From Epiperipatus broadwayi (Eukaryota; Animalia; Onychophora): DNA of 64,000 nt. Positions 13,797 through 64,000 of the stretch are shown piece after piece. How positions within the stretch are numbered: position 1 is the stretch's first letter; each line of letters starts with the position of its first letter. The stretch covers positions 6,448,001-6,512,000 of the forward strand of contig JAQFVV010000005.1 in NCBI GenBank assembly GCA_028023455.1. The letters run 5' to 3'. The notes below the pieces were generated by a model. The model saw nothing but the letters and a program-made list of their open reading frames with translations, was not told the origin of the DNA and did not search any database. Position numbers and translations under genes: made by a program.

Positions 13797-13799
13797 ATT

Positions 13800-17140: not shown

Positions 17141-17156
17141 AAGGAGGGGAACGGGG
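17141..17156 (+). other. Polypurine tract, preceded by an 11-bp palindrome (17116-17140)
   Basis: AAGGAGGGGAACGGGG ends 3 nt before the 3' LTR; TAAAATTTTTT-aag-AAAAAATTTTA lies immediately upstream. Confidence 0.85.
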
Positions 17157-17159
17157 TAA

Positions 17160-18855: not shown

Positions 18856-21800
18856 ATAAGTAGTGAAAAATTAACACTAACATATAAGAGTATTTATAAA
18901 ATATATTCCTTACAGATTTACTCATCTATATAAAGATAACTAACCCCATTTTAACTTTCCCTGAGATTGAACTTAAGAACCCATAAATCTTGCCATGTAT
19001 CACAGTGTTATATAAGTTTAATAGTTACTTACATTTATTTATACAATCTAAACCTAAAATAAATCCCATTTAATCCCATTCAATATGGCTAATAATATTA
19101 AGTCAAATATTACATGTACATGGCATAGTAATATCTGAGAAATTTTATTACATTAATAATAATAATATTAACTAACTAAGAAAGAAATAATTATGAGAAA
19201 ATGCATTAAATAATTCTCAAACAATTGTGACAATTTAAAATTTATCTCATTGAAATATTGATACTTGAAAAATGTTTGAGAGTTTTTGGGAATTTGCAAA
19301 CACTTAAACTAACAGCATCACAGATGATGGAAAGCACAAATAAGTTCATCTTGTAATATAATTCTTTCTGAAACAAAACAAAAATTAATAAATTTTACTT
19401 AGCATACTTGTTAATCTAAGGTAATTATATTTAACACATTAATCTGTTTTTAAGATTGTTTATGACTTTGACATTTATCATATTTAAGATTTGTCTCGAT
19501 AATCCATAATTTATGAGTGGCATTTTAATATTTATCTTTCCTAATCCATTATTTATGGATGGCATTCAAATATTTAGCATTGAAAAATCCGTACTGCATT
19601 TCTTTAAGCACTGGATATAGTGTTATTACACACAACAGTTTAATTTCATTTCAACAGATGGGATAATTTTATCCAAAGTATTAGCATTCATTACTTTTTT
19701 AATTTGGAATATAATTACTCTATTTACTTATATGTCTTCAATTCTTGTTGCTAATGGTTCTGATTGTATCTCTGATAAATTAATTATCCATAACAAAATG
19801 ATTTTCATTACTTTTTGAATCAAAGTTCATTTCTCTAAGTGACAAATTTATGGAGGGATATTTGAGTTGCAAAATTATTGTTCAAAGTTTTTCCTTACAT
19901 AATTAAAGATGAGACAATTCACCGTATTGAGACAAAAATGCATTTTTTCTTAGTAAAGAAAATAGTTATTATTACAATAATTTGAAAATAAAAATCAGCT
20001 ACTTGTTTGAAGTTAATAAATATAATTTTTCAAATCTGTCAGCTATTTACCATTATTTTCAATTGAAGAAATCCAGTATTTTATTGAAATAGTGAGAAAG
20101 CATTACATAAGTCAATTTGTCCATTTTCCCACTAACAGTTGGCTGTAATAAAGGATAATTCTTGAAATAAAGAATTAGTGAATTAATTAATGATAGTTTT
20201 TGGTTTATCTGTGGTTCATCTTTTTCTAGTACAATGAGAAGTCATTTTGCTAAGCAAATGCCTAGACTAGCTGATCATCATGTAGATGGCAAAGAAAATG
20301 ACGATTTAAAAATTTGAACCTGTTTAGGCAGTGAATGCAATAAAAATTTGTGAAGACTATCTGCAACTCCAGATTTTATATCAGTTATCACATGATGTCT
20401 GGATTACAGAATATTCTCCATATTTTATTGGGGTTTCTTGGTTTGTCTACTAAATATTAGAAGAGGTTGTTACAGTTATTTCCAGCAAGTGTTAGAGTTA
20501 AGATTTCTTTGAACCAATGAATCTTAAATCTTTAGAAACACCATTTAAAAATTAAGAAAAAAAAAAGAAAACAATTGCAGACTTTTCCAATGCTTTCACT
20601 TTCATTTCTGGGTTTTAAAATAACTCAAGCATTTATTTAAAATAAATAAATCATAAAACTTAATAGTTCTGAGATATTCAGTTAAATGTAAATTAATTTT
20701 TTAATGAATATCATTAAATAAATATTTTAGCAAAGTAAATCAATCTTTGCTAAATCTAAAATTTAAACATGTAATCTTCAACACAAACACACAAAATATA
20801 ACAACTGTTTATTATGCACATAAATAAAAATGTAATCTAAATGTAATTGCTTTACCTCAAAATATTTTAGTGTGGTAATGTTAAATTTATAATCTATTTT
20901 TTTACTTCTGTATAAAATTAGTTGTTTTATCTTTGCTCTTTGACAAGAATAATGACAAAATATATGCTACTTCTTTTATATAAGGATCGATAATAAAATC
21001 TGCTTAGAAAGCCATTAAAAAATGCTTTATAAAATTATATTTCTCATACACATTAGTACAAGAGATTATTAAACATGATTTTGGTTATATTCTATGCTAT
21101 ATACAATCAATGAGAACAATTAAAGCCGATTAAATTTTTTTATTTTTTAAAATATAATAGCCAGTTTACAGTAATATTGTAAGATTACAATTTATAGCAA
21201 TAGTAGCTCAACTAGATATGCATAATGATGGAGAACGAGTTATAAATTTACCAAGCATTCACAAAAAGTGTTTACACTTTTGGCTGAGATTGAAAAGGAA
21301 TTTTACTATGTACCAGCTGATGACTATTTATGAAAACCATTTACATGATAATAAATTTGTTCCACAAAGATGATAAATCTTCTGAAAATTAAATAAATAA
21401 AATTTTGAAAATGTTTAATATGACTTTCGACTAAATGAGAAATCGTTTCAGGAATGGTTTGATAACACATTGTAATAAAAAGCATATTTACTTTTAATCT
21501 AACAGTTTTATTCTTCATAATTACTTAACAATATAGTTTAGTATGGATATCACTTATCAATGGATTTGAATAAAAGGTTGCCAAAATGAAGTTTGAACTT
21601 AGTCATAAAGCTATTATATATATATATATAAATTAATAAAATACAAATAAGTTGTTTTGGAATTATTTCTAGATGGTCCAAATACTTGGGAAAAATACAT
21701 GAGTAGGATTGTTATTTAAAGATAAGGATAAAGACCAGTTGTGATAGTTTCAATGATCTATAAGGTATTTTTACTTGTGTGATAATTAAATGAATGGAAA

Positions 21801-23973
21801 AGAATAATATTGAGACAAATACAAGCTTTTAAAGTTGATAGGTTTATAGATAATAGTTTATATATAATATAATTTACATAGATGAGTAAGACATTTGAAA
21901 ATATAGAGAAATGCTTATAAAATAGTGAATAGAAATAAATTGTTGACACTGTTAATTTAAAATGTGAATGGATAAAAAATTAACCATTTTTTAATATGAA
22001 AATAACTATTACATTTATTATTTAGAATATAGAGAAGTCTGGGTTAAAAATAATTTAGAATTAAGACAAGGATACCCTATATTGCCTTTATTGCTTTTAC
22101 TATATTTAAAAGAAATGGGGTTGGTACTAGGATTAGAAAGAGTTCTTATATATATATATGAAGGGGAAATGTTATATGTTTTATCAATTCTATTTTGTTT
22201 TCTATATGCAGAAATTAATGAAGATTATTAATTTTTTCAATTTTTTAATATTTTAACATTTTCTTTCTTTTTTTTTTTTTTAGATTGGCAGTAAATCATT
22301 TCTGAAAAACTCTTATTTACAAAATATGTAGAATAAAGTTATTGGTATGGCATCAGATCAGAACTGGTTCATATAAATGCATTTTTTTAAATTTGGATTT
22401 TTTTATAACATTGTCAAAGTTGTTGGTAAGCTTATGTTTACGGGATTCCAGTTTTCCATTCTGATGATTCCCTGAACATATAATTAGTTATACATGAAGG
22501 ATATTATCTTTATTGGAAATACAGCAAATGTGGACTCTGTAGGTAAACATCCAGTTTAATTCATCAGTAACACAAACTTCAGATTTTTATAAGAAATGCC
22601 CAGAAATAGATCAATTTCATGTTGTAAATTAATAGGAATAAGAATCTCCACAAGAATCTTTGCCCAGATTTTGTATAAGAATTAATTGATTTATAAATGT
22701 TTTTAGACTGGGAATCATAATTGACCTATCCATGGAGTTGTCTATTGGGAGACTAATAATAATAACTAAAACACTAACTGATTAAATAACTTAGCCAGTG
22801 TTTGGCTAAGAATGGAAGTACCTGGATTTGATTGCTTCTTAATATTTGTAATTTTCCCTTGTTAGGTTTTTAATTAGTATTAGCACTATGTACTGTATGC
22901 ATCAAAATTAGGATTTCAAAAATCTATATAATTTTAAAATTTTTTGATTTGAAACTTTAGATATAATGCAATAATTTTAAACATGAAATGCACTTTTTTA
23001 AATCAATGTTTAGAAATTTATTTTTATTGGTGATTTTAAACTGCATGCTTGGAAATTATATTTTGAATGTTATAAGTTGTTATGAATTGATGCAACTTAA
23101 AACTGCCCGCCTCAACTGTTAAAAGCAGTCTGTTTTTAATATCTTAAACGGAAGAAATATTTTCTGCATAATACATTTTATTACTTCACTGTGATTATTA
23201 TATGAAACTTCTTATCATTTATGTAAATGATGTTAATTTTTATTTGTTGCTTTCATACATTTTAAAATCTAAAAATTGTTGACAAATTTTTAAGTTACTT
23301 AATTTGACTTTTCTTGCATTCCAATACTAGAAAATTACTTTTAACACAGAATCTGAAAATAATTTTTTGAGGAAATAAATTTAATATCGTTAGTTTTTTT
23401 TTTTTTTAATAGTTTGTATTTCAAACTAATAAATTGCCTATTCTTGAGAAAAGAAGGTCCATCATTAAAAACGCACTTTAAGAAAATAATAGTTCATCAT
23501 AAAAATATATATAATATATTTTAAAATTAAATCACCCCACATGGTTTAATGTTTAATATTTGTATATTTGGTTAGTATAGCATTATGCACTGGGATTATT
23601 TTCTATAATATTCTTTGTATTCAGTAGTTTGTGAAAAATAGAATTATAGATAGTTTTATTTATGTGGAGAAAAGTGTATCATGCAAAAATGTAAAGCAGT
23701 TAAAATTAATTATTCATAGTGTTTTGAACACTATTTGAAAAAATGAAAAAAAAAACTGAAAAATATTTTCTTTGGTCAAATTGTGAATGAGTATCAATTT
23801 TTTTTAGAAAATAACTGAATTAGTTATAAAAAAATTCTTAAAAAATTAAAGGTACTCTATTTGAACTTAATCAGTTTCAAAATTTTTTGTATAAACATCA
23901 CATATTTGCAAGATAAAAAAAATTCTCCTAATATCTAATATGAATAAAGATTTCTTTTTTATAATTTTTCAAA

Positions 23974-24774
23974 ATGGATGAAAAGGTTTTAAAAAAAAAA
24001 GAAAAGTTTATTAATGATGTAAATAATTACAAGGCTACTCAAACAAATACTTTAAAATTATCTGAAACATTTTATCGTAAATCAAAACATTTACATTTTA
24101 ATTTATGTGATAAAACTACTCAAAAACACGATTTGAAAACATTGGACAACTCTCATAATTATTTTTCTTGTTTTTTGTGTGGTTATAAAACTATTTACAG
24201 AAAAGATTTACAGAAGCATAACATAATTCATACAGGAGAAAAGCCTTTTCATTGTCACTTATGTGACTACAAGGCTGCTCAAAGAAGTAATTTAATGAGA
24301 CATGAAAAAAATCACCGTGGAGAAAAACCGTTCAAGTGCAGCATTTGTGATTTCAAGGGGGCTTACAAATATGTTATAAAAGTGCATGAAAGAACACATA
24401 CGAGAGAAAAACCTTTCCATTGCAACTTTTGTGATTACAGGGCCAATTATAAAAATGATGTGAAAAAACATGAAATAAATCATATGGGGAACAAACTTTT
24501 TCACTGTAGATTCTGTAATTACAAATCTGCTCGACATAGTTGTGTAATAAAACATGTAAAAATTCATTTTGAAGGTAAAAATTGTTTGTATTTTTACTTA
24601 TACTATTGCAAAGTCATTCAAAAAGATACAGAAGACAAATGTCACATTATTCCTGAATTCTTTAAGTGCTCCTTATGTGATTATAAAAATGCAGAGAAAA
24701 ATGTTATGGTGAATCATGAAAGGAATCATTTCACTGGTACAGACACTCTTGATTTTCTTGTACAATTTATTTAG
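23974..24774 (+). CDS. C2H2 zinc-finger protein (ZNF-A): 5 tandem fingers plus 1 detached C-terminal finger
   Basis: 266-aa ORF with repeated F-x-C-x2-C-x-Y-K...H-x3-H units and TGEKP-type linkers; ends FKCSLCDYKNAEKNVMVNHERNHFTGTDTLDFLVQFI. Upstream exons are not defined. Confidence 0.88.
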   Translation: MDEKVLKKKEKFINDVNNYKATQTNTLKLSETFYRKSKHLHFNLCDKTTQKHDLKTLDNSHNYFSCFLCGYKTIYRKDLQKHNIIHTGEKPFHCHLCDYKAAQRSNLMRHEKNHRGEKPFKCSICDFKGAYKYVIKVHERTHTREKPFHCNFCDYRANYKNDVKKHEINHMGNKLFHCRFCNYKSARHSCVIKHVKIHFEGKNCLYFYLYYCKVIQKDTEDKCHIIPEFFKCSLCDYKNAEKNVMVNHERNHFTGTDTLDFLVQFI

Positions 24775-27479
24775 TAAGTATTAAGTACAATTTTGGATAA
24801 CTTTTATATCATGATAAAAAGATAATGTATTAAAATAATTACATTCTCCATCCTTTTGACACAACATTCTGAAGTGAATCATCAGATCGAAATGTAAAAG
24901 AGAGTGTATATTATGATTCACAATAAATATATATATGTACTATATTTTCATTGAAAATATAAATATATGAATGTATATAAGTTATGTACATTTGTAGTAA
25001 AACTTCTGTATTGAACAATATTAGAATTTAAACAAATTTTTAAAAATCATGTAATATATTATATAATCTATCAAAATTACAGGACTAGTAACAAAATGCA
25101 AATTTCTTATTATTGTTTCTATTTTATTGTAAACAACCTATTTTGGTTTTAACATTTAATGTTATATATTTTATTTGAAAATTTTCAATGTAAATTAGAG
25201 TAAAATGATAAAATATGTGTGTTGAATGTAATGTCTTTCTAACAAATAGACATTAATGATATCTGCAATAAAAAAGTAGGAAACATATAAAACTTAAAAG
25301 CGAATATCAAAATATATTCTATAACAAACTTAAGTTGTTTTTTTTTATTTGTTTTTTTTTTTTTTTAGTGAAATGGTTAATATTATGATCATATGTATAA
25401 TTACAGTCAATTTTTTAAAAACTTATTACGTTTTGGAATTACAATCTGAAAAGTACTTCCTTACAGTTAAAATCTTTAGATTAAGATAATATCGTTGGAA
25501 GTTCTATTTTTTATTGCTTTAATATCGGCAATGATAGGGTCATTTTCATCTAATAATACCTGAAAAGAATTGTAGAGTTTATTCAGAAAAAAAATCTATT
25601 CTGGTTAATAGTAAACATGAGAAAATTATGTATATAAATATTTTAAGATTTTCTTTCAAATAATTAATCACAATTACTGATGATTAAGTTGTTAAGTTTA
25701 AAATTACTCTTATTCATGAGTGTAAAATCTTATCTCTGAACTCCTTTATTTAATCTGATTATTTTTATTTATATAACATTGGCAAACATTTGTGGATGGA
25801 TATATTTGTAACAGAGAAAATGGAACTGCAAATTAATCCCAATTGAAGAATTAAAAATTTAGAATTTCCACATGTTGTATATTATTAAATAAATAAATAT
25901 GCAAAAGATTTATTGTTTGGTAAAGTTCGTAAGAAATTTAAACATCAGAAGTGACAGATCTGAATTCAATCCATGAACCTTCAGGTCCAAAGGCTGCCAT
26001 TTTAGGACATAATATATTGCTTTAAATTTCTAATAACTTTTGGGTGAAAAAAAAAAAGAGAATAAATTAAATTATTTTTAATAAATTGTTTCTAAATATA
26101 TACAATCTCTTTGAATTCATCTGATGAATTACATAATTTTGATGTCTTTTTTTACTATGTGGATGATGAACATATGATAGTAGGGTAAAGCAACTATGAA
26201 ATCAGGTATAAAGTAATCGAAATAAAAAAAATGGCTACATTTCAATTTTTCCCTTAGTGATCTGATTATTGGATGTAATTACATAATTAACTTTGTATAG
26301 TCTATAGTAGTTATTTTTAATATATTTTTATTTAATTATTTAGACTATTCACTTATTATGAAGTATTTGCTTTTACAAATTTTGTCACAATGTAAAGATC
26401 AATAAAAGCTTTTTTTTATTTTCATTGATTTGTTATTTTAGATACTACATATTTATAATCATTACTAAACCTATCATTATAGGTTGTAGATTATATAAGT
26501 AGAATTTAGTTAGAATAACTACTAGAGATGGCGGAAACTGTGGAGCCATAATCTTAATCTTTTCCTACAAATCAGAAGCAATGCTTTAATTAACTAAATT
26601 ATTAAATTTTCTGCATGAAAAAGATGCAGAAAATCATTAGATGAGATTAGTAATCTTTGCAGTAAGTTGTCTAAAGATTCTATATTTGAGATTTCATAAT
26701 TAATTAGCAGTCTTTAATAAATATACCAAGTCAGTCTGCATTGAATTAAAAGTATTACAAAAATTAATTTCATGTATTAGTTATCAAAACAATTAGACAT
26801 CAAATAAAATTACATAATTTTTAAACTGCTGCTACAAATAAGTGTGAGAAATAACCAGATAATTACACTATTTTATGATTGAGATTTAATGTTTATTACA
26901 TCAGAGTGTGTATGATATTGCTGAAACATATTTTACTCCATTGCTGCCATTCTGAGCATCAGTAATCAATAGACTATAGTTAATAGTGCTTATTAAATCC
27001 ATATGCAGTTCTAATATCTGTTGAGTACTGTGGCTTATGATAGATGGCTGGAATGACATGAAATAAATAGTACCATATTACTTTGAATTTAAGATGCATC
27101 CAAATTTAAGACACAGTAGGATTTTAAGTTCGAAAAATTGAGAAAAAAATATCACCTGAATTTAAGATGCATTTATATATATTTAAATATGAAACTAATA
27201 TAAATACAATATAACTCACCTAATTTATTGTGAATCTTCTTGAGATATATAGTTCTTTCACTTTCTATATCTTCACATTCAGAACTTATATTCACATTTC
27301 ATTATTCCATCAGATACATCATCTTTAACCCATTTAAATTGCAGCCAAATATTACAATTTCTTTTGTCAATTTGCTTTCATGTAAAGTACATTTTTCTAT
27401 TGAAATCTGAATCATTCTTCTAAAATAATTTACATTTTTACAAAGATTTTCTGGAAAAAGTTTTAAATGTGTAAAATAA

Positions 27480-37074: not shown

Positions 37075-37203
37075 TAAAATGGATATTTTTTAGTGTAATT
37101 TTCACTACAGCACCCACGCAAGGTAGGGATTGGTTTCTATCCACTTTCAACATCTTGTGGGTGTCTGTAATCATAAACATATAACCAAAGACATGTGAAA
37201 AAG
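37075..37203. repeat. Direct copy of the arm of the 38.1-38.5 kb fold-back
   Basis: TAGTGTAATTTTCACTAC...GGTTTCTATCCA...ATAAACATATAACCAAAGACATGTGAAAA matches 38130-38245. Confidence 0.85.
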
Positions 37204-37288
37204 TAGTATAATTCCCAAGGTGCATATTTTGTGTTGAACCAGCACTCATCAGGGCCTAGATAACAATCTCATATCTTTATCTTTGTTC

Positions 37289-38020
37289 ATTAAACTGTAG
37301 TAATTGGCTCTCTCTCTATATATATATAATTATAATTGAAATAATATTTTTAAACGGTTTATAAACAATTCAAACAATCTTTAAATCCGCAGAAGTACTT
37401 TCGGTTACTTTCAAACCTGCCTCAACTGCTATTAAATTCAAAAACTAAAAGCGGAAGCAAACGTCATCAATTCAAATTCCACGAATCTCGTATTTTAATG
37501 TTAGAAGCTTGTCGATTTATCAAATGTGTTTTATTCCTGTTTATAAAAATTGCCTCTTTAATTTTTCTTTTACTATGGTTTCTCTCTTCATGAAGAATTT
37601 TCAAAATTAAATTTAAATTTATGTTTACATGTTTTTTCATGATCAAAGAAAACTGAAGAAGATATTAAATCACCATTATTTTTATTTTTTACACGCTTAT
37701 ATAAATTAAAGAGGCAATTTTTATAAACAGGAATAAAACACATTTGATAAATCGACAAGCTTCTAACATTAAAATACGAGATTCGTGGAATTTGAATTGA
37801 TGACGTTTGCTTCCGCTTTTAGTTTTTGAATTTAATAGCAGTTGAGGCAGGTTTGAAAGTAACCGAAAGTACTTCTGCGGATTTAAAGATTGTTTGAATT
37901 GTTTATAAACCGTTTAAAAATATTATTTCAATTATAATTACAATATTATTTTTAATTAACGGATATTTTTATTTATTTTATATATATAGAGAGAGAGAGA
38001 GCCAATTACTACAGTTTAAT
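37289..38020. repeat. Large inverted repeat: apparently perfect 238-bp arms (37327-37564 / 37703-37940), 138-bp spacer, plus outer arms (37289-37326 / 37979-38020)
   Basis: Base-by-base reverse complementarity across the inner arms. The outer arms share ATTAAACTGTAGTAATTGGC plus a (CT)n(AT)n tract of different length, and the right side carries an extra 38 bp (37941-37978). Confidence 0.97.
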
Positions 38021-38074
38021 TGATGCGTCAAATTTACTGTCCTCACAACATTGAAACAAACCACTTGATGGAAG

Positions 38075-38490
38075 TATATTAATATTTTTTATTAGACAAG
38101 AGATTATTCACTTAATTAATAATATTTCTGTAGTGTAATTTTTGCTACACCACTGTCATGCAAGATAGGGACTGATTTCTATCCATTTTTAACACCCTAT
38201 GAAGGAATATAATTATAAACATATGACCAAAGACATGTGAAAATGGGTTCTGTTTGCTTTTAACACCTTGTGGAGAAATATAATCACAAACATAACCAAA
38301 GATATGTGAAAATGGTCTGTTTCACATGTTTTTGGTCATATGTTTATGATTACATTCTTCCACAAGGTGTTAAAAGCAGATAGAAACCAATGCATGAGAG
38401 TGGTGTAGTGAAAATTACACTACAGAAATATTATTCATTAAGTGGATCATCTCTAATCTAATGAATGATTAATAAAATTATTAATATATT
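38075..38490. repeat. Second fold-back (arms ~38075-38250 and ~38318-38490) with a partial internal tandem copy; MITE-like
   Basis: CACTTAATTAATAATATTTCTGTAGTGTAATTTTTGCTACACCACT at 38109 is mirrored at 38399-38444. The middle ~38255-38315 repeats TTTTAACACC...ACCAAAGA.ATGTGAAAATGG. Confidence 0.88.
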
Positions 38491-47164: not shown

Positions 47165-48100
47165 TTAAGACCTTGATAAATGAATAAACAACTCAAGTGT
47201 ATCATGTCCAGTAAAATGATTATTTTCATGACTTTCCCAATCATTTTTAATTATGGTTTTGTAATCACAAAAATAGAAATTAAATACAGTATTATGAATG
47301 TAAGATTTGTTTCCTGTAGGATTAGTCTTATAATATTTCATACAGATTTTTTCTGTATATAAAAACTTTTGGGGTAATTTTTAATGTTCACAAGATAAGG
47401 ATTTTCTTCAACATAAAAACTTTCATGTGTTCTATTACACTGCTTATCATAATTATATTCAAATGAATTACAATGAAATGATTTTTTTCATGTGCTTTTA
47501 AATAATATTTAGAAGCTGTCTTGAATTCACAGAAATTATAGTGAAATGATTTTTCTCTTGTATGAATTCTTTCATGTCTTTTTAATTCATTTTTATAAGC
47601 AGTGAATTCACACAAATCGCAATGAAAATATTTTTCTCCTGTATGTTTTTATCATGCATCCTTAAACAACAATCATCAGATGTTTTGTATTCACACAAAT
47701 TACAATGAAAAGGTTTCTCTCCTATAAGATTTCTTTCATGTATTTTTAAATAATGTTTATAAGAAGTTGAGAATTCACAATAACTGCAATGAAAACGCTT
47801 TAATCCTGCATGAAGCTTTTCATGTTTTTTTATATGCCTTTTAGTAGAATCTCTGAATTTACAAAATCTGCACTGAAAAGGTTTTCCTCCAGTTTAAACT
47901 TTTTCATGTTTTGTTAAACTGCTTCTATCAGAGGCTTTATATTTACATAAGTTTCAGTGAAAAGGCGTTTCACCTTTATGAATTCTTTCATGTATTTTTA
48001 AATAACTTTTTTGATCACTTTTGTATTCACACAAGCTACATTGAAAATTTTTTTCTCTTGTATTTTTTTCAGGCATTTTGAGCCATAAGAATATTATATA
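47165..48100 (-). pseudogene. C2H2 zinc-finger pseudogene (ZNF-B)
   Basis: About 6 tandem finger remnants (e.g. FQCSLCEYKSDQKSYLKIHERIH, FQCRFCKFRDSTKRHIKKHEKLH) with in-frame TGA/TAA stops and frameshifts. It ends VFNFYFCDYKTIIKNDWESHENNHFTGHDTLELFIHLSRS* (stop 47167-47165). Confidence 0.88.
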
Positions 48101-53200: not shown

Positions 53201-55899
53201 TATATTACTTTACGTAATGAGTACGCGCTTTACAAATTTAATTATCAAAAACTATCTGAATTGGCATATAAAAAAATGCAGTAGAGCATATTTTTAAGTA
53301 ATCATTTAAATAAGCACTAGATTCTATTATGGACACTCCCAATGTCTGTTGCATAAGATTCCATTTTAAATATGGAAAAAGTATTGTTAAGTTTAATATA
53401 AACTTATACTTTCATATTTGATATAATAATATACCAATGGAAAAATAAAAAAGTATATAGTACTCAATCCTTCTTTTAATATAAACTGGGAAGATTAAAT
53501 TTATCAGGCAAAAATTTCGAATTTATTAAAATATACTGCATAAGAGTTTACTATATATCTTATTTTTATAGTTCTAAATTTTGACTTCAGCAATTTTTTA
53601 ATATTATAGAGTGATATCAAATATTTAGTTCCAATTAATGTTCAGAAAGATCTTATGAAAATGAATAAAATTAAAAGGAAGGATTTTAAAACAACAAAAT
53701 AATAGAATAATTGGTCAGCTGGTGAATAATTGATTTTTAGGCAGTACCTATTAATATAAAAACTCTAAATGATCATTTGAAAAAAAATGGAATCTTGGAA
53801 TAGAATACACTTAAAATACATGTTGTATCTATCATGATAATATTAATAAGTATTTAGTTAAATTAAGATGAATATGCTAATACCTATAGAATTGTAAGGC
53901 TTAAATTGACATAATCATATTTGAACATTTCATCCACATGCTTTCCTTTTTTAATTTTTTACTACATTCATTTCTATGCATCATTCTTCCTCTACTTCAT
54001 CCAATCTTTGAATAGAAAATTATATTTTGTAACATTTTCATATATAAATAAAACAGTATGTAGTTTTTTCTGTAATTATGCTACAAATAATTCATATTTG
54101 TTTTTGTGATAACATTATAATAATTATTAGTATTCATGATAATTTTGATGATTAATAAATACAAATGTACTCTACTTATTTTTGTGATATCTGTGTTTGC
54201 TAGATAAAATTGAAAAGACATTAAAATGAAATCCTGTAAAATGAATATATTATGTATAATCAACACTTAGAAAGATTTAACTAATTTAATAAAATTATTG
54301 AACTTTAATTGAGAATGTGGGTTTATGAGACCACAAAGAGCTCAGTTTATAAGCAGGGCATACTCTCATTTAATATAGAATGTAAGCTAGATACCTTTGT
54401 CAAGGTAGTACAATTCTACAAATAAAATTTTAGTGTTGAACAAAATAAAAAAAAAACCTTATGCTAGTGCTTATAAAATACTAAAAAGTAGAATATTTTA
54501 TTGATGGGATAGAGAAAAATATCAATGAAAATTTTGATCTTTCTTTTTTTCAATAAATGCTACTACGTATCTTTAATCCTAAACTACAACCTATCAACCT
54601 GAGAACTTTTTGTAATTCTATTAGAATGCTATTCTCCAATAATTAACAAACACATTTCAGATTATGATGACCAACTTCATTCTTATCTATTTTCTCCTTC
54701 ATTGTTTATAAATATACATACATCCACTGACATAAAAATATTTTCATAGTAAGACTTTATTTTTCCAGTATTGTTTACTGTATAGTATTTATACTAGTGT
54801 TTATTATTATTTGTTCTATTTACTACATTTAGGTTTCACATTCCTTTATGCATGTTATAGTTTTATATATTGGTTGGACAAAATAAATTTACAAGACAAT
54901 TTTAAAGGCTATACTTTGACTTTTAACAATGTTCTCAGTATAAACTTGTGGAAATTAATATGTATCTGTTCTAAGAATTTGTTGAGGATAAATATTATTA
55001 TCATACAATAAAAAATTATATTTTCAAAAAAACATTTTATGATCGAGATTCATTTCAAATTTTTTGTTATCTCCAAATCTTTCTATTTTTTAAATCTATT
55101 CCTTAAATACTACCAACTACACTAATACTTAATCATCAATTTCTTCTCCAATCTTTTACATTCATCACTTTTGCAATATACATCTCATAATTTCCTTTTG
55201 CTCAAAATAAATCCCTGATGCAATTTTCCCATATTCTCATAATTTCCCTAATAAAGATGTTTCATTAACTCTTTTCAACAATGCTAATCTCATCTTTCTA
55301 ATATATCCCTTCCATTATTCTCTATATCCAAATTCTTTGAATCACCAAATTTTTCTCTTTTTAAAAGTAATTATTCACATTGATGCTCAATATTAAATCA
55401 TTTAAAAAACATTTAACAAACTACAAACTGGAATCTGAGTTTAGGTAATATTTCACTATCACAATTTTTATACTAAATTATTAATATTACATCATCAGTA
55501 TCATATACTTGTTTCATAACTTAATTTGAGATGATCTTCAAAATCCATATTACAATCTTACAGAATATCACCTTAATTATTTACATAGATGTTAATTACA
55601 ATATGATACAAGTTTAAACATAAATGAATAGTCATTGTACCTTAGAAAATTCATTCCACAATGAAGACAATAACACATTCCATTACATCATAGATAGAAT
55701 AATTATTTTAGAGATATCTAAGCTATGACAAGAATAAGTGATTTAACATTCTGTCAGATGGATTACTTTTATGCATCACTAATAAAAATTCTACCGATTT
55801 AATTCTTTTTTAGTAGAGGCTGAAAACTTCTGTTGGCTTAACACTAATCTAATACATTAACCAGCATTATCAGATTTTTAAAATTAAATTTTGATTTAT

Positions 55900-57050
55900 T
55901 TATTATGTAAATCAATACAAGAATCTCAAGAGTTTAACATTAAGTAAAATGATTAGCTTCATGATTTTCAATATAGTTTTGTGTGTTATTGAAAATATAT
56001 AATGACATATAAACACTTCAATAATTGCAGCAGTCTCTTGATATATATTATATTTATTTATTTTGATCAAAGTTGTATTTTATATGAGTACTTTTTATAA
56101 CTCATAAAGTCACTTTGTAAACACCTAAATTGCACTGAAAAGGATTTTGTTTTCATGTATTTTAAAGTAAGATACCTTCTCAAGCAACACTGCAATTACA
56201 AGAGTTGCAGTGGGTAAGTTTTACTTCCTAATAAATTCATTCATCTATTTTTAAATTTTTTTGATAGCAATCTTATAAACATACAAGAAGGAATAAAAAA
56301 ATAATTCTGCAGGAGTTTATTTTGTCAGCAATCTTCTTATAATCACACAAAATCTAATGAAAATATTTTTTATTTGTATGTAATTTTTTATGTAAGTTTA
56401 AGCAATATCTGATACCAATTTAGCAATCATATAAGGTTTACTGAGAAAGGTTTTTCATCTGTATGAAGATTTTTGTAAATTTTTGAAGAATATTTTATAA
56501 CAATTATATATGAACTGCAATTTTAAGATTTTTTTTCTCTCTATGTAAGCATTTATGTCTTTTTAAATTTTTTTGATCTATTCTGTAATCAGAGACAAGT
56601 ATAATAAAATAGGTATTAAATTATTTTTAACAGAAATCTTGTTACACATATATAGTTTTCATTTTTAACTACTTTCTTGATCTTTTAATATATCTGTAAT
56701 AGCAATGGCAAATACTTTATATTCTATATCTTCTTTCACATATTTTAAGGTTACTTTTTGAAGCAGTGTTATAATACAATGTTGGCATTGAAAAAAAAAA
56801 TCTTACATATATTTTCATGCCTTTTAAAACTAGTTCTAATTGCAAGCACTCTTATAATCACACAAAGTGCAGTGAAAAGGCTTTATTGATCATGAATTTA
56901 TTTATTTTTGTCCACAAATCTTGGAATCATATAAGTTGCACTGAAAAGATTTCCAAGTCTGTATTTTATCATGAAATTTTAAATTAGCATTAACAGCTAT
57001 TCTCTAATGACATAAATTGCAGTGGAAAAATTCAACTTTAGCATGTACTT
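55900..57050 (-). pseudogene. Heavily decayed C2H2 zinc-finger pseudogene (ZNF-C)
   Basis: Repeated minus-strand CCTTTT/TTTCA(C/G)TGCAA..T.TGTGATTATAAG finger starts (~57025, 56945, 56880, 56220, 56140) with many stops. It ends VFICHY...ENHEANHFT*C*TLEILV at ~56020-55905. Confidence 0.75.
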
Positions 57051-59537
57051 TAAAATTACTTCCAGAAAACAGAAGATATAAATTCATCAGCCAAGACAGA
57101 GGATATGAATTAAATGGTTAATTACACAATTTAAATCTTGTTTTTTTTTTTATTAATATGTTAAATATTATCTGTTTATACATACTATAACATAACATTA
57201 CATACATTTCATATTAATAAATTTAACAAGAGGATATTTTCTTATAAAAATAAAAAGTATAATTCCAGCTTCCTTATGATTAACTTTTGTAATTCTACTA
57301 CTATTTATTGAAAACATTATTATATATATAAATAGATCTTTACACGGTATGAGTCATATATACATATGCTTGAAAACCTATTTGTAAAAATTAAAATTAA
57401 ATAATACCACTTATATTCTTTTTATCTAAAACATACTTTTTATGTAGATTTTACAAATAAAAATAAATTTTAGAATTTCTTACATGTTATATATTTTGAA
57501 ATAATTGTTCTTTAAATATATCACATGATTTCATTTTACAATACACTACAATATTGATTTAATAGTTAATGTTATAACTTCCCGTTTTCTTCTAAATTTT
57601 GTAAATATTAAAATTGATTTTTTTTACATCAACCACATTGACTTCTCAAGGTTACATTTAATCTATGCTTGAAAACAAAAATTCATTTTCAGTTACCCTA
57701 TTCATGATATATTCATGCAAAAATATATAATTTACTGAACACTGCATGACAATACCAAAGATCCTTCAATTAGTATCTAGTAATTAATCTTGTTTGGATA
57801 GTGACTCGATGTCTGTAAAGTAAATTATGATCTGAAGGTCACTGAATAAAAAACTGCCTAGAAATTAATTTGGGACTATTATCTGATATTTATTGATTAT
57901 TCATTAATATGTACCATGACTAGTATCATGGATTATTTTCATAAAATATATTTTTATAACAACTACTGGATATATCATCCCACATTGCTATATGGATAAA
58001 TATAGTTGAACACACCTTGGGTCAAATATGATTTTCAATTATTGGTATTTTCAATTTAAAAAAAAATGGCTTTAGATTAAAAAGATCCATTTATAAATAA
58101 TAAAGAGTTTAAGATTAATAAATCATTTATATCACTACTAATGTAACAATTATCTTTTTGTACAGATACAAAATAATAGAGCAATCAATCCATATTTCAA
58201 CAATTTTCAATACACAACAGTCCTTTCATTACAAAATATAGTATCAACAAATCATTTTCTATATAACACTTATCATTTTGCTCCAAAAATAGTTCATTTG
58301 ATACAAAAAAAATCATCACTGCAATAAATGATAGAAAGATTATAACATCCACAATATATGAGTTATCAATACAACACTATTGATTGTCTCAGTTTTAATT
58401 ACAGCAATCTTTTTATATCATTTAATATGCAAAGTAAATATTTTAAAACAGTTTTTGAAAGTGTTTATAAAAAAAAGTAAGCCCGAAGAATAATAAAACC
58501 AATAAAAATTCATCAGGTGCTAATTAATTGGTTTTTAGATATCATTCATCATCAAGATGTTTTAAGTGAACATTATTTAATTCTGCAACTATTATTGAAA
58601 TATTAACATATCTATTCAATTCAATTAGTTAGTCTACTAAAATAATACTGATATTTATCTATAGAAAGAGTTTGTTGGGGGGGGGGAGATTAATACAATA
58701 AACAAATAAGTATAATGGATAAATTAATATTTTCAAAATAATATTCATTACATACTAAACTAAATTTCTTTCATTAATCTCTTACTCTTTAAGTACACCT
58801 ATCAACAATTTTCTTCTATCTCTCTTTCAGCAATCTCTTCTAACACACCCTTTCCTTTGATGCAAATGCTCAATCCAATTCCTCTTTTTTTTTCTCATAA
58901 TTTTGATAATGAATAATGTTTTTTCCTTTCATGTTTCTCCAACATTTATATTACTAATCTTACCCATCTGATTTATACTATTTATTTTCTTCTAAATCCA
59001 TATTCCCAAATCCTTTGATCTTTTGCTAATTATCAATATTTGTCCTAAATAAAAGAAGATACTAAACTAAATGCACAAAAGCTTCTTTTATAAATTTTAC
59101 TATCAATCAATGTCAAAATAACCTACTATTGTTATAAAGTCTATTTGACCATTACAATTCTTATTTTCAATCTTTATCATTCTTCTGCCATTTCATAGTT
59201 ATTAAAAATTTCAAATGTTCTATAATTATATGTTGTGGGTGTGGGTACATTACTTTATCAAAACTTCATTAGATTTTTAATAAAATATGGTAGACACTTA
59301 CATTGATACTTATTCTATAAATAAATGGGACAACATATTCTACCATATTACATTCTGATCAATTATTTAAAAATGTCTCAATCATGACAATTGACTGGAC
59401 ATTTATTATTCTCAAAGATAGATATTTAAAATATTCAATGGAATTCTAATAATTATTTTGTCATCAAATAAATTTGTGGATTGCTTTAGGACTAAATACT
59501 AAATATGACATTATCAAGATATAATTTGAATTATTTG

Positions 59538-61106
59538 TCATCTTAAATTTACAAGAAATTCAAGTGTGTCATAATCAGTGAAATGACTAGTTTCATGACT
59601 TTTCAAAACACAGCTATTTGCATTCTGGTAATCACATACATAACACTTAAAGACTCCAGTATTCTGACCATCATTAAGCATATCTTTTTGTTTATTTTGA
59701 TAAAACATTAAAAAAGAATATTCATGAATATTTTTTTGGTGATACCTCAGACCACTCTGAGAACCAGCTTTGTAATCGCACAAGCCCCATTGAAAAGGTT
59801 TTTCTGCAATATGCTTCTTTTCATGCATTTTTAAGGTATATTTTGCACAAGTTTCATAATTACATAAATAACAGTGATAAGGTTTTTTTATCATATGTGA
59901 TCTTTCATGTACTTTCATATATTTCTTGTGAATTGTTTTAAAATTACACATGTTGCAGTGAAATGGCTGTTGTCCTGAATGTGTTATTTCATGTCTTTTT
60001 AGATAACGTTTTGCAGCTGTTCTATAGTCACATAAGCTACAATGGAAAGGCTTGACTCCTGTATGTATACTTTCATGAGTTTTTAATGTATTTTTAGAAA
60101 TAGTTTTGTATTCACAAAAGCTGCAATGGAAAGGTTTTTCGTCTTTATGAATATAATCATGAATTTTTAAACTGTGTTTGTCAGCAGTCTTGTAATCGCA
60201 TAAGCTGCACTGAAATGGTTTTACTTCTATATGTTTTCTTTCATGCAATCTTAAATTACCTTTTCTGGCTGTCTTGTAATTGCACAGGTTGCAATGGAAC
60301 GGTTTATCTATAACATGTGTCATTGCATGGATTTTTAAACTATTTTTAACAGCAGTTTTATAATCACACAAATGACAATGAAATGGTTTTTCTCCTGTAT
60401 GTTTAAGAAAATGAACTTTTAATCTACGCTTAACTCCAGTCTTGTAATTACACAAATTGCAATGGAAAGGTTTATCGATACCATGTGTGATTGCATGTAT
60501 TTTTAAACTATTTTTAACAGCTGTTTTATAATCACATAAATGGCAATGAAATGGTTTTTCTCCTGTATGTATAAGTAAATGAACTTTTAATCTACTTTTA
60601 ACTGCAGCCTTATAAGAACATAAATGACACTGAAAAGGCTTTTCTCCAGTATGTGTTTTTTCATGTAATTTTAAACATTTAGTATCTGCTGTTCTATAAT
60701 CACATATGCTGCAGTGAAATGGCTTTTCTTGTGAATGCATTCTTTCATGCAATTTTAAATTATATTTCACAGCAGTTTTGTAATCACATAAGCTGCACTG
60801 AAAGGGTTTGTTTCCTGTATGTGAATTTTCATGAATTTTTAATTTTGTTTTATCAGTAGTCTCATAGTCACAGAAGTTGCAATGGAAAGGTTCTTCAACT
60901 GTATGAGTTCTTTCATGCACTTTTAAACAACCCTTTTCAGTAGTATTATAATTACAAAGGGTGCAATGGAAAGACTTGACTCTCAAATGTATTTTTCTAT
61001 GTGCTAATAAACTATATTTAACTGAAGTCTTGAAATCACACAAGTTGCAGTGAAAAGGCTTTTTCCCTTCTGTATGCTTGCTTACTTTTCCAAACTTTTG
61101 ATTCAT
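59538..61106 (-). CDS. Multi-finger C2H2 zinc-finger protein (ZNF-D): 15 intact tandem fingers, 1 degenerate (C>W) finger, 1 detached C-terminal finger
   Basis: 522-aa ORF of F-x-C-x2-C-x-Y-K-T...L-K-x-H-x3-H repeats; ends FKCYVCDYQNANSCVLKSHETSHFTDYDTLEFLVNLR. The true start is uncertain. Confidence 0.9.
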   Translation of the reverse strand: MNQKFGKVSKHTEGKKPFHCNLCDFKTSVKYSLLAHRKIHLRVKSFHCTLCNYNTTEKGCLKVHERTHTVEEPFHCNFCDYETTDKTKLKIHENSHTGNKPFQCSLCDYKTAVKYNLKLHERMHSQEKPFHCSICDYRTADTKCLKLHEKTHTGEKPFQCHLCSYKAAVKSRLKVHLLIHTGEKPFHCHLCDYKTAVKNSLKIHAITHGIDKPFHCNLCNYKTGVKRRLKVHFLKHTGEKPFHCHLCDYKTAVKNSLKIHAMTHVIDKPFHCNLCNYKTARKGNLRLHERKHIEVKPFQCSLCDYKTADKHSLKIHDYIHKDEKPFHCSFCEYKTISKNTLKTHESIHTGVKPFHCSLCDYRTAAKRYLKRHEITHSGQQPFHCNMCNFKTIHKKYMKVHERSHMIKKPYHCYLCNYETCAKYTLKMHEKKHIAEKPFQWGLCDYKAGSQSGLRYHQKNIHEYSFLMFYQNKQKDMLNDGQNTGVFKCYVCDYQNANSCVLKSHETSHFTDYDTLEFLVNLR

Positions 61107-61270
61107 CTTTAATTACTCAAAATACCCTTTTTTCTGTATACATACTTTGATATTTTAAAGGATTTTTATTCTGAAAGATTTATATTTACACAAACAGCAA
61201 TGAAATGGTTTTTCTCTTGAATATTTTCCTTTTTAGCAGCACTGTAATTATAAAAGTTGCATTTTCTATG
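61107..61270 (-). pseudogene. Decayed finger remnants upstream of the ZNF-D ATG
   Basis: The minus strand gives HRKCNFYNYSAAKKE and, after a frameshift, KPFHCCLCKYKSFRIKIL*, closed by stops before 61106. Confidence 0.65.
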
Positions 61271-62524
61271 AAATTTACAGTTTTAAAATTGTACAATTAA
61301 AATTCAAGTGAATTATCTTGAGTAAAACATTTTTATTCATATCAGAAGTATTACTAAGTTCATTTATGAATTATATTCTTTTCACAATAATTTTTATAAA
61401 GCAAGGCAGCATTATTTTTCTATTGTCTAATATCTTTTATCTTCACTAGGCGACTTCAAGCAGAAATCATTTTCTTGAAAAGTATGCATTGGTAAGCAAT
61501 ATTTCATCATCATTATCATTATTATCAATTTTATGTGTTTATTTATACTTTTGTAATAGAATTCTTTGCATGTAACATATTTTTTCTATACTTTTGTTAT
61601 TTCATTATCAAAAATGGTAACTAAAACATCTGTTTATTTTTTATATTGAATGTTAGAGAGCCATACTGTATTTATAAAAGTTGATATTTTATATAACTTA
61701 ATAGCTTTAATTAGAAAATTTCAGATTTTTTATTTTAAAAAATTAAAAATTTTGTTTCATGTCTAATGCAATGGTCTATCAAAATTTTAATAACTAAAAT
61801 ATTCAATGTAATTAATAAAATATTGACTTCACCATTTCTCTTACATAACTTCTCCTATTCAATAGTAAATCCAGTTCATATTAAATCCTATTTCAATACA
61901 TTGTACATATAATTTTTAAAATAATATTAATATTGTTCTATGTGTATGTTTATGTAGATTTTTTTTAAAAATCGCAAAAATATTATTAAATAAAATTAAT
62001 CAATTTTTAAAGAATATTTTAAATATAAAATAATTTATTATCTTCAATGGGACACTTTCTAATTTTTAATGCTTAACTAGAACAATATTTTAATGTTATT
62101 TTACAATATGTTAATGAAATTTCAATATCCAAAATTATTTCAGTCAGTGATCAAATGTAATTTTACTAATTGAATCAGTTACTTATGGCTATACCAATAC
62201 ATTATTTATTCCACATAATGGATACTATATAATTCATACTGATTATCTAATGAAGTCATACTAAATTGTGAAAAGTAATCTTAAAATCACCAGCTATTAA
62301 CCTATGATTATTATATTTCCCTCCATAACTTGTAATAAGACAGTGAAGATAAATCGATCCAACATGATCTACTTTTACTCTAGTACTTGTCAGAATCATA
62401 TACAGCTAATATTTTGTAGAAAAGAAGTTTTTAAATGTGCATTACTGCCAACCTAAAAAAACAAAAAATATATAAAAAATATTAAATCAGCATTTATTTT
62501 TTATAGCGTCTGTATACAATTGTA

Positions 62525-62684
62525 ATCACATTCATATCGGCTTTTTCAAACCAAATTGTGCAAACGCTTTTATTGCTGCATAAATTCTATATCTTGTATG
62601 GGTCAGAGGACATTCATTTGTTATTTAACACTTGCAAAAAGCGTTTGCACAATTTGGTTTGAAAAAGCCGTATATGAATGTGAT
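62525..62684. repeat. Inverted repeat: 47/48-bp arms (62525-62571 / 62637-62684), 65-bp spacer
   Basis: ATCACATTCATATCGGCTTTTTCAAACCAAATTGTGCAAACGCTTTT is mirrored with a single 1-nt indel; CpGs are retained. Confidence 0.95.
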
Positions 62685-64000
62685 AAAAAATATTACTAAA
62701 ATTTTATAAATAAAAGAGTTTTGAGTTGTTTTTTTTTTTTTTTTAAAAAAAGCAAAGTTTTTACTATCAATAACAGACGATTGAAAAGTAAATTGGTTTA
62801 ACATATGAAGAAATAAACATAAAATATTCAATTATGATTAGCAACTTCAGGAGTATTTCACACAAAATAATTATATATATATCAAAAACAAAACAAATCT
62901 TGGAAAACCTTTTTCCACATTATGTGACAACATGATTATTCAAAAGCATTCCATAAAGATGAAAACAATATAGAAAGATGAATGATCAAAAAATAAAAAT
63001 AAATATATCATCCAATATAGGCAGAAAAAATGAAAAGATAAAAAAAAATTATAACACATTATAGTGTCAATAATATTTTTTTATTCTGTGCCAACTATAC
63101 AGAATTATAATTTTTTTAAAATAAATATCACAGATGAAAAGGGAAGGAGGGTCTGTATATAGAAAATGAAAAGATAAAAATGATATTGTTGTTACCAAAA
63201 ATCCACAAAACAAAGTTCCATTATGCAAAATCAAAGTTTGCATAACTTCAAATTTATTTTTTAGAGTGTTGTGGTAAATTTTAAAGTATGCACTCACTGT
63301 AATTAATTTAGTTTTAAATATATCATGTAAAACTATAAATATTAAATGTATTAATTTAAAAAATAATTTATTATTACGGGCTAAACTAGAATTTTCACTG
63401 TATATTTCATAAAATATCAATTTTGAAATAATAGTTATTCAGTAATTATTATTTATTAAACAACTTAAATAATAATCTTTTAAAAACATAAAAAAATATC
63501 AAATATATTACTTAAAAATTGCACATACTGTCAATATGAAAATAGAATCTTAAAATATACCAAAGAATCTTTTAAATTTTTTTAAAAATTCTCCATTTAA
63601 TAACAACTTTCAATAAAATAATATTATTCAATATTAAATGAAATGAAAATGAGAAACATCAAATTTATTATTAAAAATCATTCATAAATACAAAATGTAT
63701 TATTACACAGTAAATAAAAATATTTATTCACACACTATCACCAATATTAAAAATTACTAAAAATTAAACTGTTTAAAAATAAGATTTAACTATTAATTAT
63801 TAAACAATTTAGTCATTAATAACCATAAAAAACTTTTTAAAAAATATTTGTAAATTTATTTTTGAAACCACAGAAAATTCATTTTCTAATGAAGGTGGAA
63901 ATTATAACAAGTGATGATTGAGTTAACAATTTAAAATATTAACATTGATATGCAAACAGAAAAGACTCTATATTATTTGTAATTAGAAATCAATGTTAAG

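What the first reader, a model, noticed from the sequence alone, without database searches (positions are those of the whole stretch)
59538..59651. Conserved C-terminal module (detached finger + HFTxxDTL[DE]-hydrophobic tail) in all four ZNF paralogs
ZNF-A ends HERNHFTGTDTLDFLVQFI* (24661-24774), ZNF-D ends HETSHFTDYDTLEFLVNLR*, pseudogene B ends HENNHFTGHDTLELFIHLSRS* (47165-47285) and pseudogene C ends HEANHFT*C*TLEILV (~55905-55960). In each, a ~20-30-aa linker separates the last finger from the array. Finger number and DNA-contact residues differ widely while this tail is kept, and no KRAB-, ZAD- or BTB-like N-terminus is visible (seen). Inference: the tail is a short amphipathic cofactor-binding motif that defines an expanding ZNF family with a C-terminal effector, a possible functional analogue of KRAB-ZNFs or ZAD-ZNFs.
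Basis: partly seen in the sequence, partly recalled or inferred. Interest (0 to 1): 0.78.

Follow-up and report, generated by a model that had tools for sequence, protein, structure and literature searches.

The report
Conserved tail on zinc-finger paralogs
Four neighbouring zinc-finger gene copies (two intact, two dead) in a very AT-rich animal genome all end in the same detached finger plus a short acidic-then-greasy tail; selection has kept it and nothing like it turned up in public protein databases, but what it does is untested.

Summary
Window 59538-59651 (minus strand) is the last C2H2 finger, a 14-residue tail and the stop codon of a 522-aa, 17-finger ORF (ZNF-D). The same module closes all four zinc-finger loci in the window: A and D are intact, B and C are decayed. 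The module is a 24-31-aa aromatic-rich spacer, an atypical last finger, then F-T-x-x-D-T-L-[DE] and a hydrophobic run, with the stop 14-16 codons after the last His.

The paralogs are old: about 65-70% DNA identity, with unalignable flanks. Between A and D the tail core is as conserved as the zinc-ligand and framework positions (dN 0.20 for both). Contact residues (dN 1.0) and the 3' flank have diverged. Conservation ends at the stop codon.

Pfam, PDB sequences and a tail-focused profile search of 1.84 billion representative proteins found no counterpart. No N-terminal effector domain is visible.

I read it as the signature C-terminus of a lineage-restricted, effector-less ("ZF271-like" style) ZNF family that evolves by birth and death. 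It is probably a protein-docking or self-association unit, but that function is inference only. The amphipathic-helix claim is not consistently supported. Expression could not be shown.

This scan noted the same tail before on other DNA of this genome (s1-182756, s1-174696).

The parts
59538..61106 (-). ZNF-D: 522-aa open reading frame with 16 intact array fingers, one finger with Cys->Trp, a spacer, the terminal finger and the tail
   Evidence: The chance of a 522-codon open frame at this base composition is about 2e-21. GC is 0.305 against about 0.24 around it.
61107..61226 (-). Decayed finger remnants with in-frame stops just upstream of D's first ATG
59652..59723 (-). D spacer, 24 aa, aromatic-rich, containing QKD; homologous to A's spacer
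59583..59651 (-). D terminal ('detached') C2H2 finger, FKCYVCDYQN...SHETSH
59541..59582 (-). D tail, 14 aa, FTDYDTLEFLVNLR; the stop codon follows at 59538-59540
23974..24774 (+). ZNF-A: 266-aa ORF with 5 array fingers, a 31-aa spacer (24568-24660), the terminal finger (24661-24729), the tail (24730-24771) and the stop. The N-terminal 65 aa hold degenerate finger remnants.
47165..47287 (-). Pseudogene B terminal module: finger remnant (first Cys lost), 16-aa tail FTGHDTLELFIHLSRS, and stop
47388..48082 (-). Pseudogene B decayed finger array, with stops and frameshifts
55916..55990 (-). Pseudogene C terminal module remnant, HEANHFT*C*TLEILV: two in-frame stops, stop codon lost, frameshift in the finger
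56105..57051 (-). Pseudogene C decayed finger array

Best explanation
The flagged stretch is the coding 3' end of ZNF-D. It belongs to a roughly 60-70-aa C-terminal module that closes every zinc-finger paralog in this cluster. The module has three parts:
- an aromatic-rich spacer;
- a terminal C2H2 finger with its own conserved features, CDY[KQ][NT] and [NS]HE.[NS]H;
- a tail, F-T-x-x-D-T-L-[DE]-hydrophobic x3-x-hydrophobic, ending 14-16 residues after the last His.

It is the signature C-terminus of a lineage-restricted C2H2 family that has no recognisable effector domain. The family evolves by birth and death: tandem copies, pseudogenes, finger gain and loss, and turnover of contact residues.

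Shown:
- The tail is translated.
- It is conserved at the protein level as strongly as the zinc-ligand and framework residues.
- Conservation stops at the stop codon.
- No known domain and no public protein matches it.

Inferred: the detached finger plus tail does not read DNA. It serves as a protein-interaction unit, with the acidic-then-hydrophobic tail acting as a short docking motif for a partner (co-regulator, SUMO-like or Groucho-like surface, or another family member). That would give these otherwise effector-less arrays their output.
For: - Four of four ZNF loci carry the module, and nothing else in the window does.
- The duplicates are old: 65-70% DNA identity, no flank similarity.
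- A versus D: tail-core dN 0.20 equals framework dN 0.20, against 0.50 for other positions and 1.02 for contact positions. Array-wide dN/dS is 0.38/1.16.
- Identity collapses right after the stop: 0.38-0.50, against 0.59-0.74 in the tail.
- Invariant residues carry synonymous codon differences: TTC/TTT for Phe, GAC/GAT for Asp, ACT/ACA for Thr, GAA/GAG for Glu.
- Stop position is conserved within 2 codons in A, D and B.
- The spacers of both intact copies are open and in frame (P about 0.005).
- Pfam finds only fingers, and PDB profile hits end at profile position 73-75, before the tail.
- In a control, the half-finger-plus-tail profile gave generic arrays under 20 bits and members over 70 bits. 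It found no tail-bearing protein among 1.84e9 representatives.
- Precedent: a short, lineage-specific, family-defining ZNF-associated sequence is known, the 28-aa FiNZ (PMC10547256).
- Precedent: effector-less clustered ZF271-like arrays, for which partners are explicitly sought, are known in Hemiptera (PMC6444547).
- Unverified scan notes report the same tail at loci 2.4 and 4.5 Mb away.
Against: - There is no evidence of binding, of transcription, or of any output.
- The one run guessed to be RNA gave only contigs, with no long piece laid on D's coding region.
- Only three usable tails exist. dN/dS on 14 codons is noisy: A-D omega is about 1.3 for the tail and 0.9 for the core, because dS is low there.
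- The 'core' was delimited after seeing the data.
- Both intact ORFs have decayed fingers and stops just upstream, so they may be truncated or dying genes.
- The structure prediction failed.
- The helical amphipathicity is inconsistent between copies.
Confidence: 0.55

Rival explanations
1. Passive conservation. The terminal finger and tail are the part of the gene that unequal crossing-over within the array cannot shuffle. The tail would be a structural C-cap or packing element of the last finger (together with the aromatic spacer), with no partner-binding role.
For: - Internal fingers are visibly duplicated and shuffled. D carries a two-finger tandem duplication, 134/168 nt identical, and shows strong 84/168-nt periodic self-similarity, whereas the ends align collinearly.
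- The tail is no more conserved than the finger framework.
- Tail-only dN/dS is not significantly below 1.
- The spacer is also partly conserved and aromatic.
Against: - Ordinary C2H2 arrays need no such cap.
- None of the 120 best generic array hits, and none of 1.84e9 representative proteins, has a significant match to the tail.
- Non-framework residues of the same collinear fingers have diverged much more, 28% against 73% identity.
Confidence: 0.25
2. The tail is specifically a repressor-recruiting motif, SUMO-interacting (SIM-like) or EAR/eh1-like. That would make the family a functional analogue of KRAB- or ZAD-ZNFs that silence transposons.
For: - An acidic/Thr flank followed by L-[DE]-hydrophobic x3 resembles SIM and plant EAR cores. 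This rests on my own knowledge of those motifs and was not tested.
- The cluster sits in repeat-rich DNA: an LTR element and a high-copy hairpin repeat.
- Contact residues evolve fast, dN 1.02.
Against: - Phe occupies positions where the SIM core, as I recall it, wants V/I/L in A, D and B.
- LxLxL is met only loosely.
- No SUMO, TLE or TE-binding evidence exists.
- The follow-up on the sister locus reached the same negative conclusion.
Confidence: 0.12
3. The tail is a short acidic-hydrophobic activation motif or a nuclear-export-like signal rather than a repressor dock.
For: Net charge is -1 to -2, with bulky hydrophobics (F, L, V, I) interleaved with D/E/T. That composition is typical of minimal activation motifs, by my own knowledge.
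Against: - No test was possible.
- The pattern does not complete a classical export-signal spacing in D or B.
- The terminal residues vary (I, R, S).
Confidence: 0.1
4. Nothing here is a working gene. All four copies are relics, and the shared end only reflects slow decay of a once-functional family.
For: - B and C are clearly dead.
- A and D are preceded by decayed fingers with stops.
- No long piece of the run guessed to be RNA lay on D's coding region.
- D's protein is not on record in any gene call.
Against: - A 522-codon open frame at 25% GC has chance probability of about 2e-21.
- A-D array dN/dS of about 0.33, with framework dN 0.20, shows long purifying selection.
Confidence: 0.1
5. 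The conserved block is a nucleic-acid signal (3'-end processing, a regulatory site or a mobile-element end) that merely overlaps the reading frame.
For: Synonymous divergence of the tail core between A and D is low, dS 0.23.
Against: - Conservation ends at the stop codon.
- Third-position changes are tolerated at invariant residues, and dS is 0.85-1.76 against B.
- No repeat termini or flank similarity were found.
Confidence: 0.03

Closest known systems
Hemipteran ZF271-like / APEZ C2H2 expansions (Panfilio et al. 2019, PMC6444547)
   Same: - Tandem clusters of 4-8 genes with pseudogenes.
- Variable finger number.
- No KRAB or other domain.
- Fingers of the CTCF/Kruppel type. Here the best PDB matches are CTCF fingers, and several of the best database hits are named 'zinc finger protein 271-like'.
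   Different: - The paper reports no domain besides the arrays for ZF271-like proteins. Here a conserved spacer-finger-tail module closes every copy.
- None of the hemipteran hits retrieved carries a significant match. The nearest, an Apolygus protein ending ...HTGNKKLELL, scores 7.5 bits, which is not significant.
- The organism of this window is not known to me.
FiNZ-ZNFs of cyprinid fish (Wells et al. 2023, PMC10547256)
   Same: A short (28-aa), lineage-restricted, acidic, family-defining sequence with no similarity to known domains, attached to a rapidly evolving ZNF array.
   Different: - FiNZ is N-terminal, defines about 700 genes, and has expression and morpholino data.
- Here the element is C-terminal and fused to a dedicated finger.
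- Family size is unknown and there are no functional data.
KRAB-ZNF and ZAD-ZNF families
   Same: Clustered, fast-evolving C2H2 arrays with one conserved non-array element shared across paralogs.
   Different: - KRAB (PF01352) and ZAD (PF07776) are N-terminal folded domains with known partners (KAP1; ZAD dimerises).
- Neither is present here.
- The element here is 14-16 residues long and lies at the C-terminus.
Ikaros/Hunchback-type C-terminal dimerisation fingers
   Same: C-terminal finger(s) separated from the DNA-binding array by a long spacer and used for protein-protein contact rather than DNA reading. An arthropod 'hunchback family' cluster was the top ESM-Atlas feature hit for the module.
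   Different: - Those proteins use two fingers and have no such tail.
- The Atlas hit shares only 121 of 256 features, below the level expected for true family members, so it is a lead only.
- Ikaros and Helios PDB hits cover just the finger, at E of 0.008 or worse.
Plant C2H2 proteins with a C-terminal EAR motif (SUPERMAN/ZAT type; from my own knowledge)
   Same: A short acidic/Leu-rich repression motif placed at the extreme C-terminus of a C2H2 protein.
   Different: - The EAR core is LxLxL or DLNxxP and binds TOPLESS, in plants.
- Here the core is L-[DE]-F/L/I-L/F-V/I, in an animal-type array.
- No homology is implied.

Membership tests
C2H2 zinc-finger array proteins (Pfam zf-C2H2, zf-H2C2_2, zf-C2H2_16) | Tandem C-x2-C-x12-H-x3-H fingers joined by TGEKP-type linkers, above Pfam gathering scores | tested here: met
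   D: zf-H2C2_2 267 bits, zf-C2H2_16 177 bits. A: 79 and 56 bits. 25 intact fingers were mapped.
KRAB-ZNF | KRAB domain (PF01352) N-terminal to the array | tested here: not met
   No KRAB hit in A or D at E<=1, nor in upstream open frames. Small upstream exons beyond 3-5 kb cannot be excluded.
ZAD-ZNF | zf-AD domain (PF07776) at the N-terminus | tested here: not met
   No PF07776 hit, although several of the closest lepidopteran array hits do carry it.
BTB-ZF / SCAN-ZF | BTB (PF00651) or SCAN (PF02023) domain | tested here: not met
   Absent.
FiNZ-ZNF | 28-aa N-terminal FiNZ sequence, cyprinid-specific | not tested
   No FiNZ sequence or model was available in the tools. It differs by position (N-terminal against C-terminal) according to PMC10547256.
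ZF271-like / APEZ class | Many tandem C2H2 repeats with penta-peptide linker, no other domain, tandem gene clusters with pseudogenes (descriptive class, PMC6444547) | tested here: met
   The descriptive criteria are met. Phylogenetic membership in the hemipteran clades was not tested, and identity to retrieved hemipteran proteins is only 36-47%.
SUMO-interacting motif (SIM) | Core of four V/I/L-type residues (one position free) flanked by acidic or phosphorylatable residues; binding to SUMO | tested here: inconclusive
   By inspection only. The acidic/Thr flank is present. The core has Phe where V/I/L is expected in A, D and B, and only the dead copy C (LEILV) fits. Binding cannot be tested here. 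The motif definition is from my own knowledge.
EAR repression motif | LxLxL or DLNxxP at the C-terminus | tested here: not met
   The tails read LDFLV, LEFLV, LELFI and LEILV. None is LxLxL; B is the nearest (LxLxI).
Ikaros/Hunchback dimerisation zinc fingers | Two C-terminal C2H2 fingers that mediate dimerisation | tested here: not met
   There is one detached finger only. Sequence hits are restricted to the generic finger scaffold. Self-association cannot be tested here.

The most novel reading that the evidence does not exclude
The spacer-finger-tail module is a newly evolved C-terminal effector or docking unit. It would define a large, genome-wide ZNF family in this lineage, an independent solution to the problem solved by KRAB, ZAD and FiNZ, placed at the opposite end of the protein. 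It would couple fast-evolving arrays (contact-residue dN about 1) to a chromatin or co-regulator partner, possibly for transposon control.
Probability: 0.12. Interest if true: 0.7.

Novelty: new variant of a known kind. Interest (0 to 1): 0.35.

Why it matters
Many invertebrate ZNF expansions, such as the ZF271-like/APEZ class, have no recognisable effector domain, and how they signal is an open question (PMC6444547 calls for a search for alternative partners). A short conserved C-terminal module that marks a whole family would give a concrete handle for partner searches and tethering assays, and a simple marker for annotating the family. As it stands, this is a well-supported sequence signature without functional evidence, and another follow-up in this scan has already seen it at a sister locus.

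Tried and rejected
1. Word-index protein search restricted to D residues 455-522: no candidate. This is uninformative, because even A and D share no 5-residue words in the tail.
2. Whole-D search: 6117 generic arrays, best 35-50% identity, and none of the top 120 has the tail.
3. Profile design. A 40-aa module profile is swamped by multi-finger arrays, which reach up to 119 bits, so I used the 30-aa half-finger-plus-tail profile instead. It gave 3 hits at E<=1e-3, all finger sums or a repeat artefact. Diverged tails scoring under about 36 bits would have been missed.
4. AlphaFold2 on A's last 91 aa with a 3-row alignment: pLDDT 41.6, unusable, so no fold search was made.
5. 'The tail is a decayed linker plus the start of a lost finger': in-register DNA identity to 20 real junctions is not above out-of-register controls. 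Rejected.
6. 'The spacer is an intron': rejected, because both intact copies stay open and in frame.
7. Amphipathic helix: the hydrophobic moment is significant only for A.
8. A fifth tail look-alike at 53757-53795 (-), HFFSNDHLEFLY**: E = 0.65 with no fingers nearby, so I treat it as chance.
9. Reads. Only contigs were available. One run is guessed to be RNA, and no long piece of it lay on D's coding region. Nothing can be said about D's own transcription, ends or splicing.
10. Exact-protein look-up of D: not on record.
11. Literature search for the tail peptides: nothing relevant.
12. ESM-Atlas feature search: only generic small C2H2 clusters.

Scope notes:
- The organism stayed coded, and I did not pursue it further.
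- Pseudogene C was never read through for a database search.

Full report
**What is at the coordinates.** The window is 25% GC throughout and holds four loci with C2H2 fingers:
- A, 23965-24774 (+)
- B, 47165-48082 (-)
- C, 55916-57051 (-)
- D, 59538-61226 (-)

The flagged stretch 59538-59651 is, on the minus strand, the last finger (59583-59651), a 14-residue tail (59541-59582) and the stop codon of a 522-aa ORF with 17 fingers, ZNF-D. ZNF-A is a 266-aa ORF with six intact fingers. B and C are broken by stops and frameshifts. Pfam sees only C2H2 models in A and D.

**The observation.** A six-frame motif scan and a profile scan find the tail four times, once at the end of each locus, and nowhere else. 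The tails read:
- A: FTGTDTLDFLVQFI, then stop
- D: FTDYDTLEFLVNLR, then stop
- B: FTGHDTLELFIHLSRS, then stop
- C: FT*C*TLEILV, with the stop codon lost

Each tail follows a finger that is set off from the array by a spacer, 31 aa in A and 24 aa in D. The spacer is itself partly conserved: aromatic-rich, with a shared QKD. In both intact copies the spacer is open and in frame with the array. That has a probability of about 0.005 at this base composition, so it is coding sequence and not an intron. In D the unit before the spacer is a finger whose first Cys has become Trp.

**Is it more than shared ancestry?** The paralogs are old. Self-BLAST gives 65-70% DNA identity over the arrays and no similarity in the flanks.

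In a four-way DNA alignment, pairwise identity by segment is:

| Segment | Pairwise DNA identity |
|---|---|
| Tail | 0.59-0.74 |
| Last finger | 0.54-0.69 |
| Spacer | 0.44-0.63 |
| First 100 nt after the stop | 0.38-0.50 |

Conservation therefore ends at the stop codon.

A and D align collinearly over A's five array fingers. The comparison by position class is:

| Position class (A vs D) | aa identity | dN |
|---|---|---|
| Zinc-ligand/framework | 64% | 0.20 |
| Contact positions -1/2/3/6 | 15% | 1.02 |
| Other finger positions | 33% | 0.50 |
| 11-residue tail core | 73% | 0.20 |

The whole 14-residue tail is 57% identical. Array-wide dN/dS is 0.38/1.16. Fisher tests against non-framework positions give P = 0.006 for the core, which was chosen post hoc, and P = 0.035 for the whole tail.

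Invariant tail residues carry synonymous codon differences between copies, which argues for constraint on the peptide rather than on the DNA.

Two caveats apply. Tail-only dN/dS is noisy, with omega from 0.24 to 1.3 on 14 codons. And dS of the core between A and D is low, 0.23.

**Is it a known domain, and does it occur elsewhere?**
- Pfam on the isolated module gives only sub-threshold finger hits.
- A profile of the module against all PDB sequences hits CTCF, ZNF64, Ikaros and similar fingers. Every alignment stops at the finger's second His.
- The word-index search on D's C-terminus found no candidate. That means little, because A and D themselves share no 5-mers there.
- The whole-protein search returned 6117 generic arrays. 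The best are 35-50% identical, and several are named 'zinc finger protein 271-like'. None of the top 120 has the tail.

Because the claim rests on absence of relatives, I ran the exhaustive HMM search. I first checked locally that a 30-residue half-finger-plus-tail profile separates members (over 70 bits) from the worst-case generic arrays (under 20 bits). A 40-residue profile would have been swamped. Against 1.84 billion representatives, only three proteins reached E<=1e-3. All three are sums of finger matches or a repeat artefact, and none has the tail.

The search could have missed tails that score under about 36 bits. This organism's own proteins appear not to be in the public sets. Unverified notes of this scan report the same tail (HExNHFTD...EILIQLT) on paralogs 2.37 and 4.49 Mb away on the same sequence. 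I could not read those loci.

**Gene status and context.**
- No upstream open frame within about 3-5 kb of A or D matches any Pfam domain.
- Both intact ORFs are preceded in frame by decayed fingers with stops, so their true 5' ends are uncertain.
- A 522-codon open frame at this composition has a chance probability of about 2e-21. Together with framework dN of 0.20, this shows long-term purifying selection on D.
- D also contains a two-finger tandem duplication, 134/168 nt identical. This is direct evidence of array growth by unequal exchange.
- Public reads were available only as contigs. In a DNA run, depth over parts of the finger array is 20-50 times that of the flanks, which fits a large family or collapsed linker sequences. 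The tail bin is only about 2 times the flanks.
- In the run guessed to be RNA, most of what laid on the stretch was 90-95% alike, and it showed some depth over the fingers. No long piece of it lay on D's coding region. Nothing can be concluded about D's own expression, ends or splicing.

**Mechanism.**

Shown: a translated, selectively maintained, family-specific C-terminal module with no known counterpart.

Inferred: it is a protein-interaction unit. The reasons are:
- The finger is detached from the DNA-reading array.
- It has its own conserved non-ligand residues.
- It is followed by an acidic-then-hydrophobic peptide of the kind that usually docks onto a partner.

I could not decide between co-repressor docking, SUMO binding, activation, and self-association.

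Specific ideas tested and not supported:
- A consistent amphipathic helix.
- Origin of the tail from a decayed linker plus next finger.
- A confident structure.
- Membership in the Ikaros/Hunchback dimerisation-finger type. There is one finger only, and the sequence and feature hits are generic.

**Comparison with what is known.** By its features, the locus belongs to the class described for Hemiptera as ZF271-like/APEZ. That class has tandem clusters with pseudogenes, variable arrays, CTCF/Kruppel-like fingers and no effector domain, and its partners are explicitly unknown (PMC6444547). The nearest conceptual precedent for a short, lineage-specific, family-defining ZNF add-on is the 28-aa N-terminal FiNZ of cyprinids (PMC10547256). 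What differs here is the C-terminal position and the coupling to a dedicated detached finger.

**Verdict.**
The family signature and the absence of a known domain hold up. The effector function and the amphipathic helix are not shown.
- It is a new variant of a known kind, of moderate interest, and this scan has already met it at a sister locus.

Noticed in passing
window 12097-18857: LTR-retrotransposon-like element. Two 1.7-kb direct repeats (12097-13798 and 17157-18857) are 95.9% identical and flank about 3.4 kb of higher-GC DNA (0.32-0.34) with only short ORFs, one of them 139 aa at 14817-15236.
   Followed up: no
window ~62480-62700: Very high-copy hairpin (MITE-like) repeat. Inverted arms lie at about 62513-62570 and 62637-62690. 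Summed contig depth in the DNA run is about 1000 times that of the neighbouring unique sequence, and the repeat is also present in the run guessed to be RNA.
   Followed up: partly
window 60210-60545 (-): Within ZNF-D, a two-finger unit (168 nt) is tandemly duplicated. It is 134/168 nt identical overall, and the first finger plus linker is 76/84 identical. This is a recent array expansion.
   Followed up: yes
window 61107-61226 (-) and 23974-24168 (+): Decayed finger remnants lie at the 5' side of both 'intact' genes. Those upstream of D's ATG carry in-frame stops. The first 65 aa of A hold degenerate fingers. The true starts are uncertain.
   Followed up: partly
window ~24811-24824 (+) and ~59500-59513 (-): A and D share a 14-nt block, TTATATC[A/T]TGATAA, about 25-40 nt downstream of their stops in the alignment. 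At this AT content it is marginal (rough expectation about 0.1 by chance). It could be a 3'-UTR element.
   Followed up: no
window 53757-53795 (-): Weak tail look-alike, HFFSNDHLEFLY, followed by two stops, lying between pseudogenes B and C on the same strand. E = 0.65 and there are no finger remnants nearby, so it is probably chance.
   Followed up: yes
window 1612-1683 (-): A tRNA gene is the only Rfam match above gathering score in the window.
   Followed up: no
window 37083-38431: Cluster of short direct and inverted repeats at 79-84% identity. It overlaps the inverted-duplication note s1-087270 on this window.
   Followed up: no
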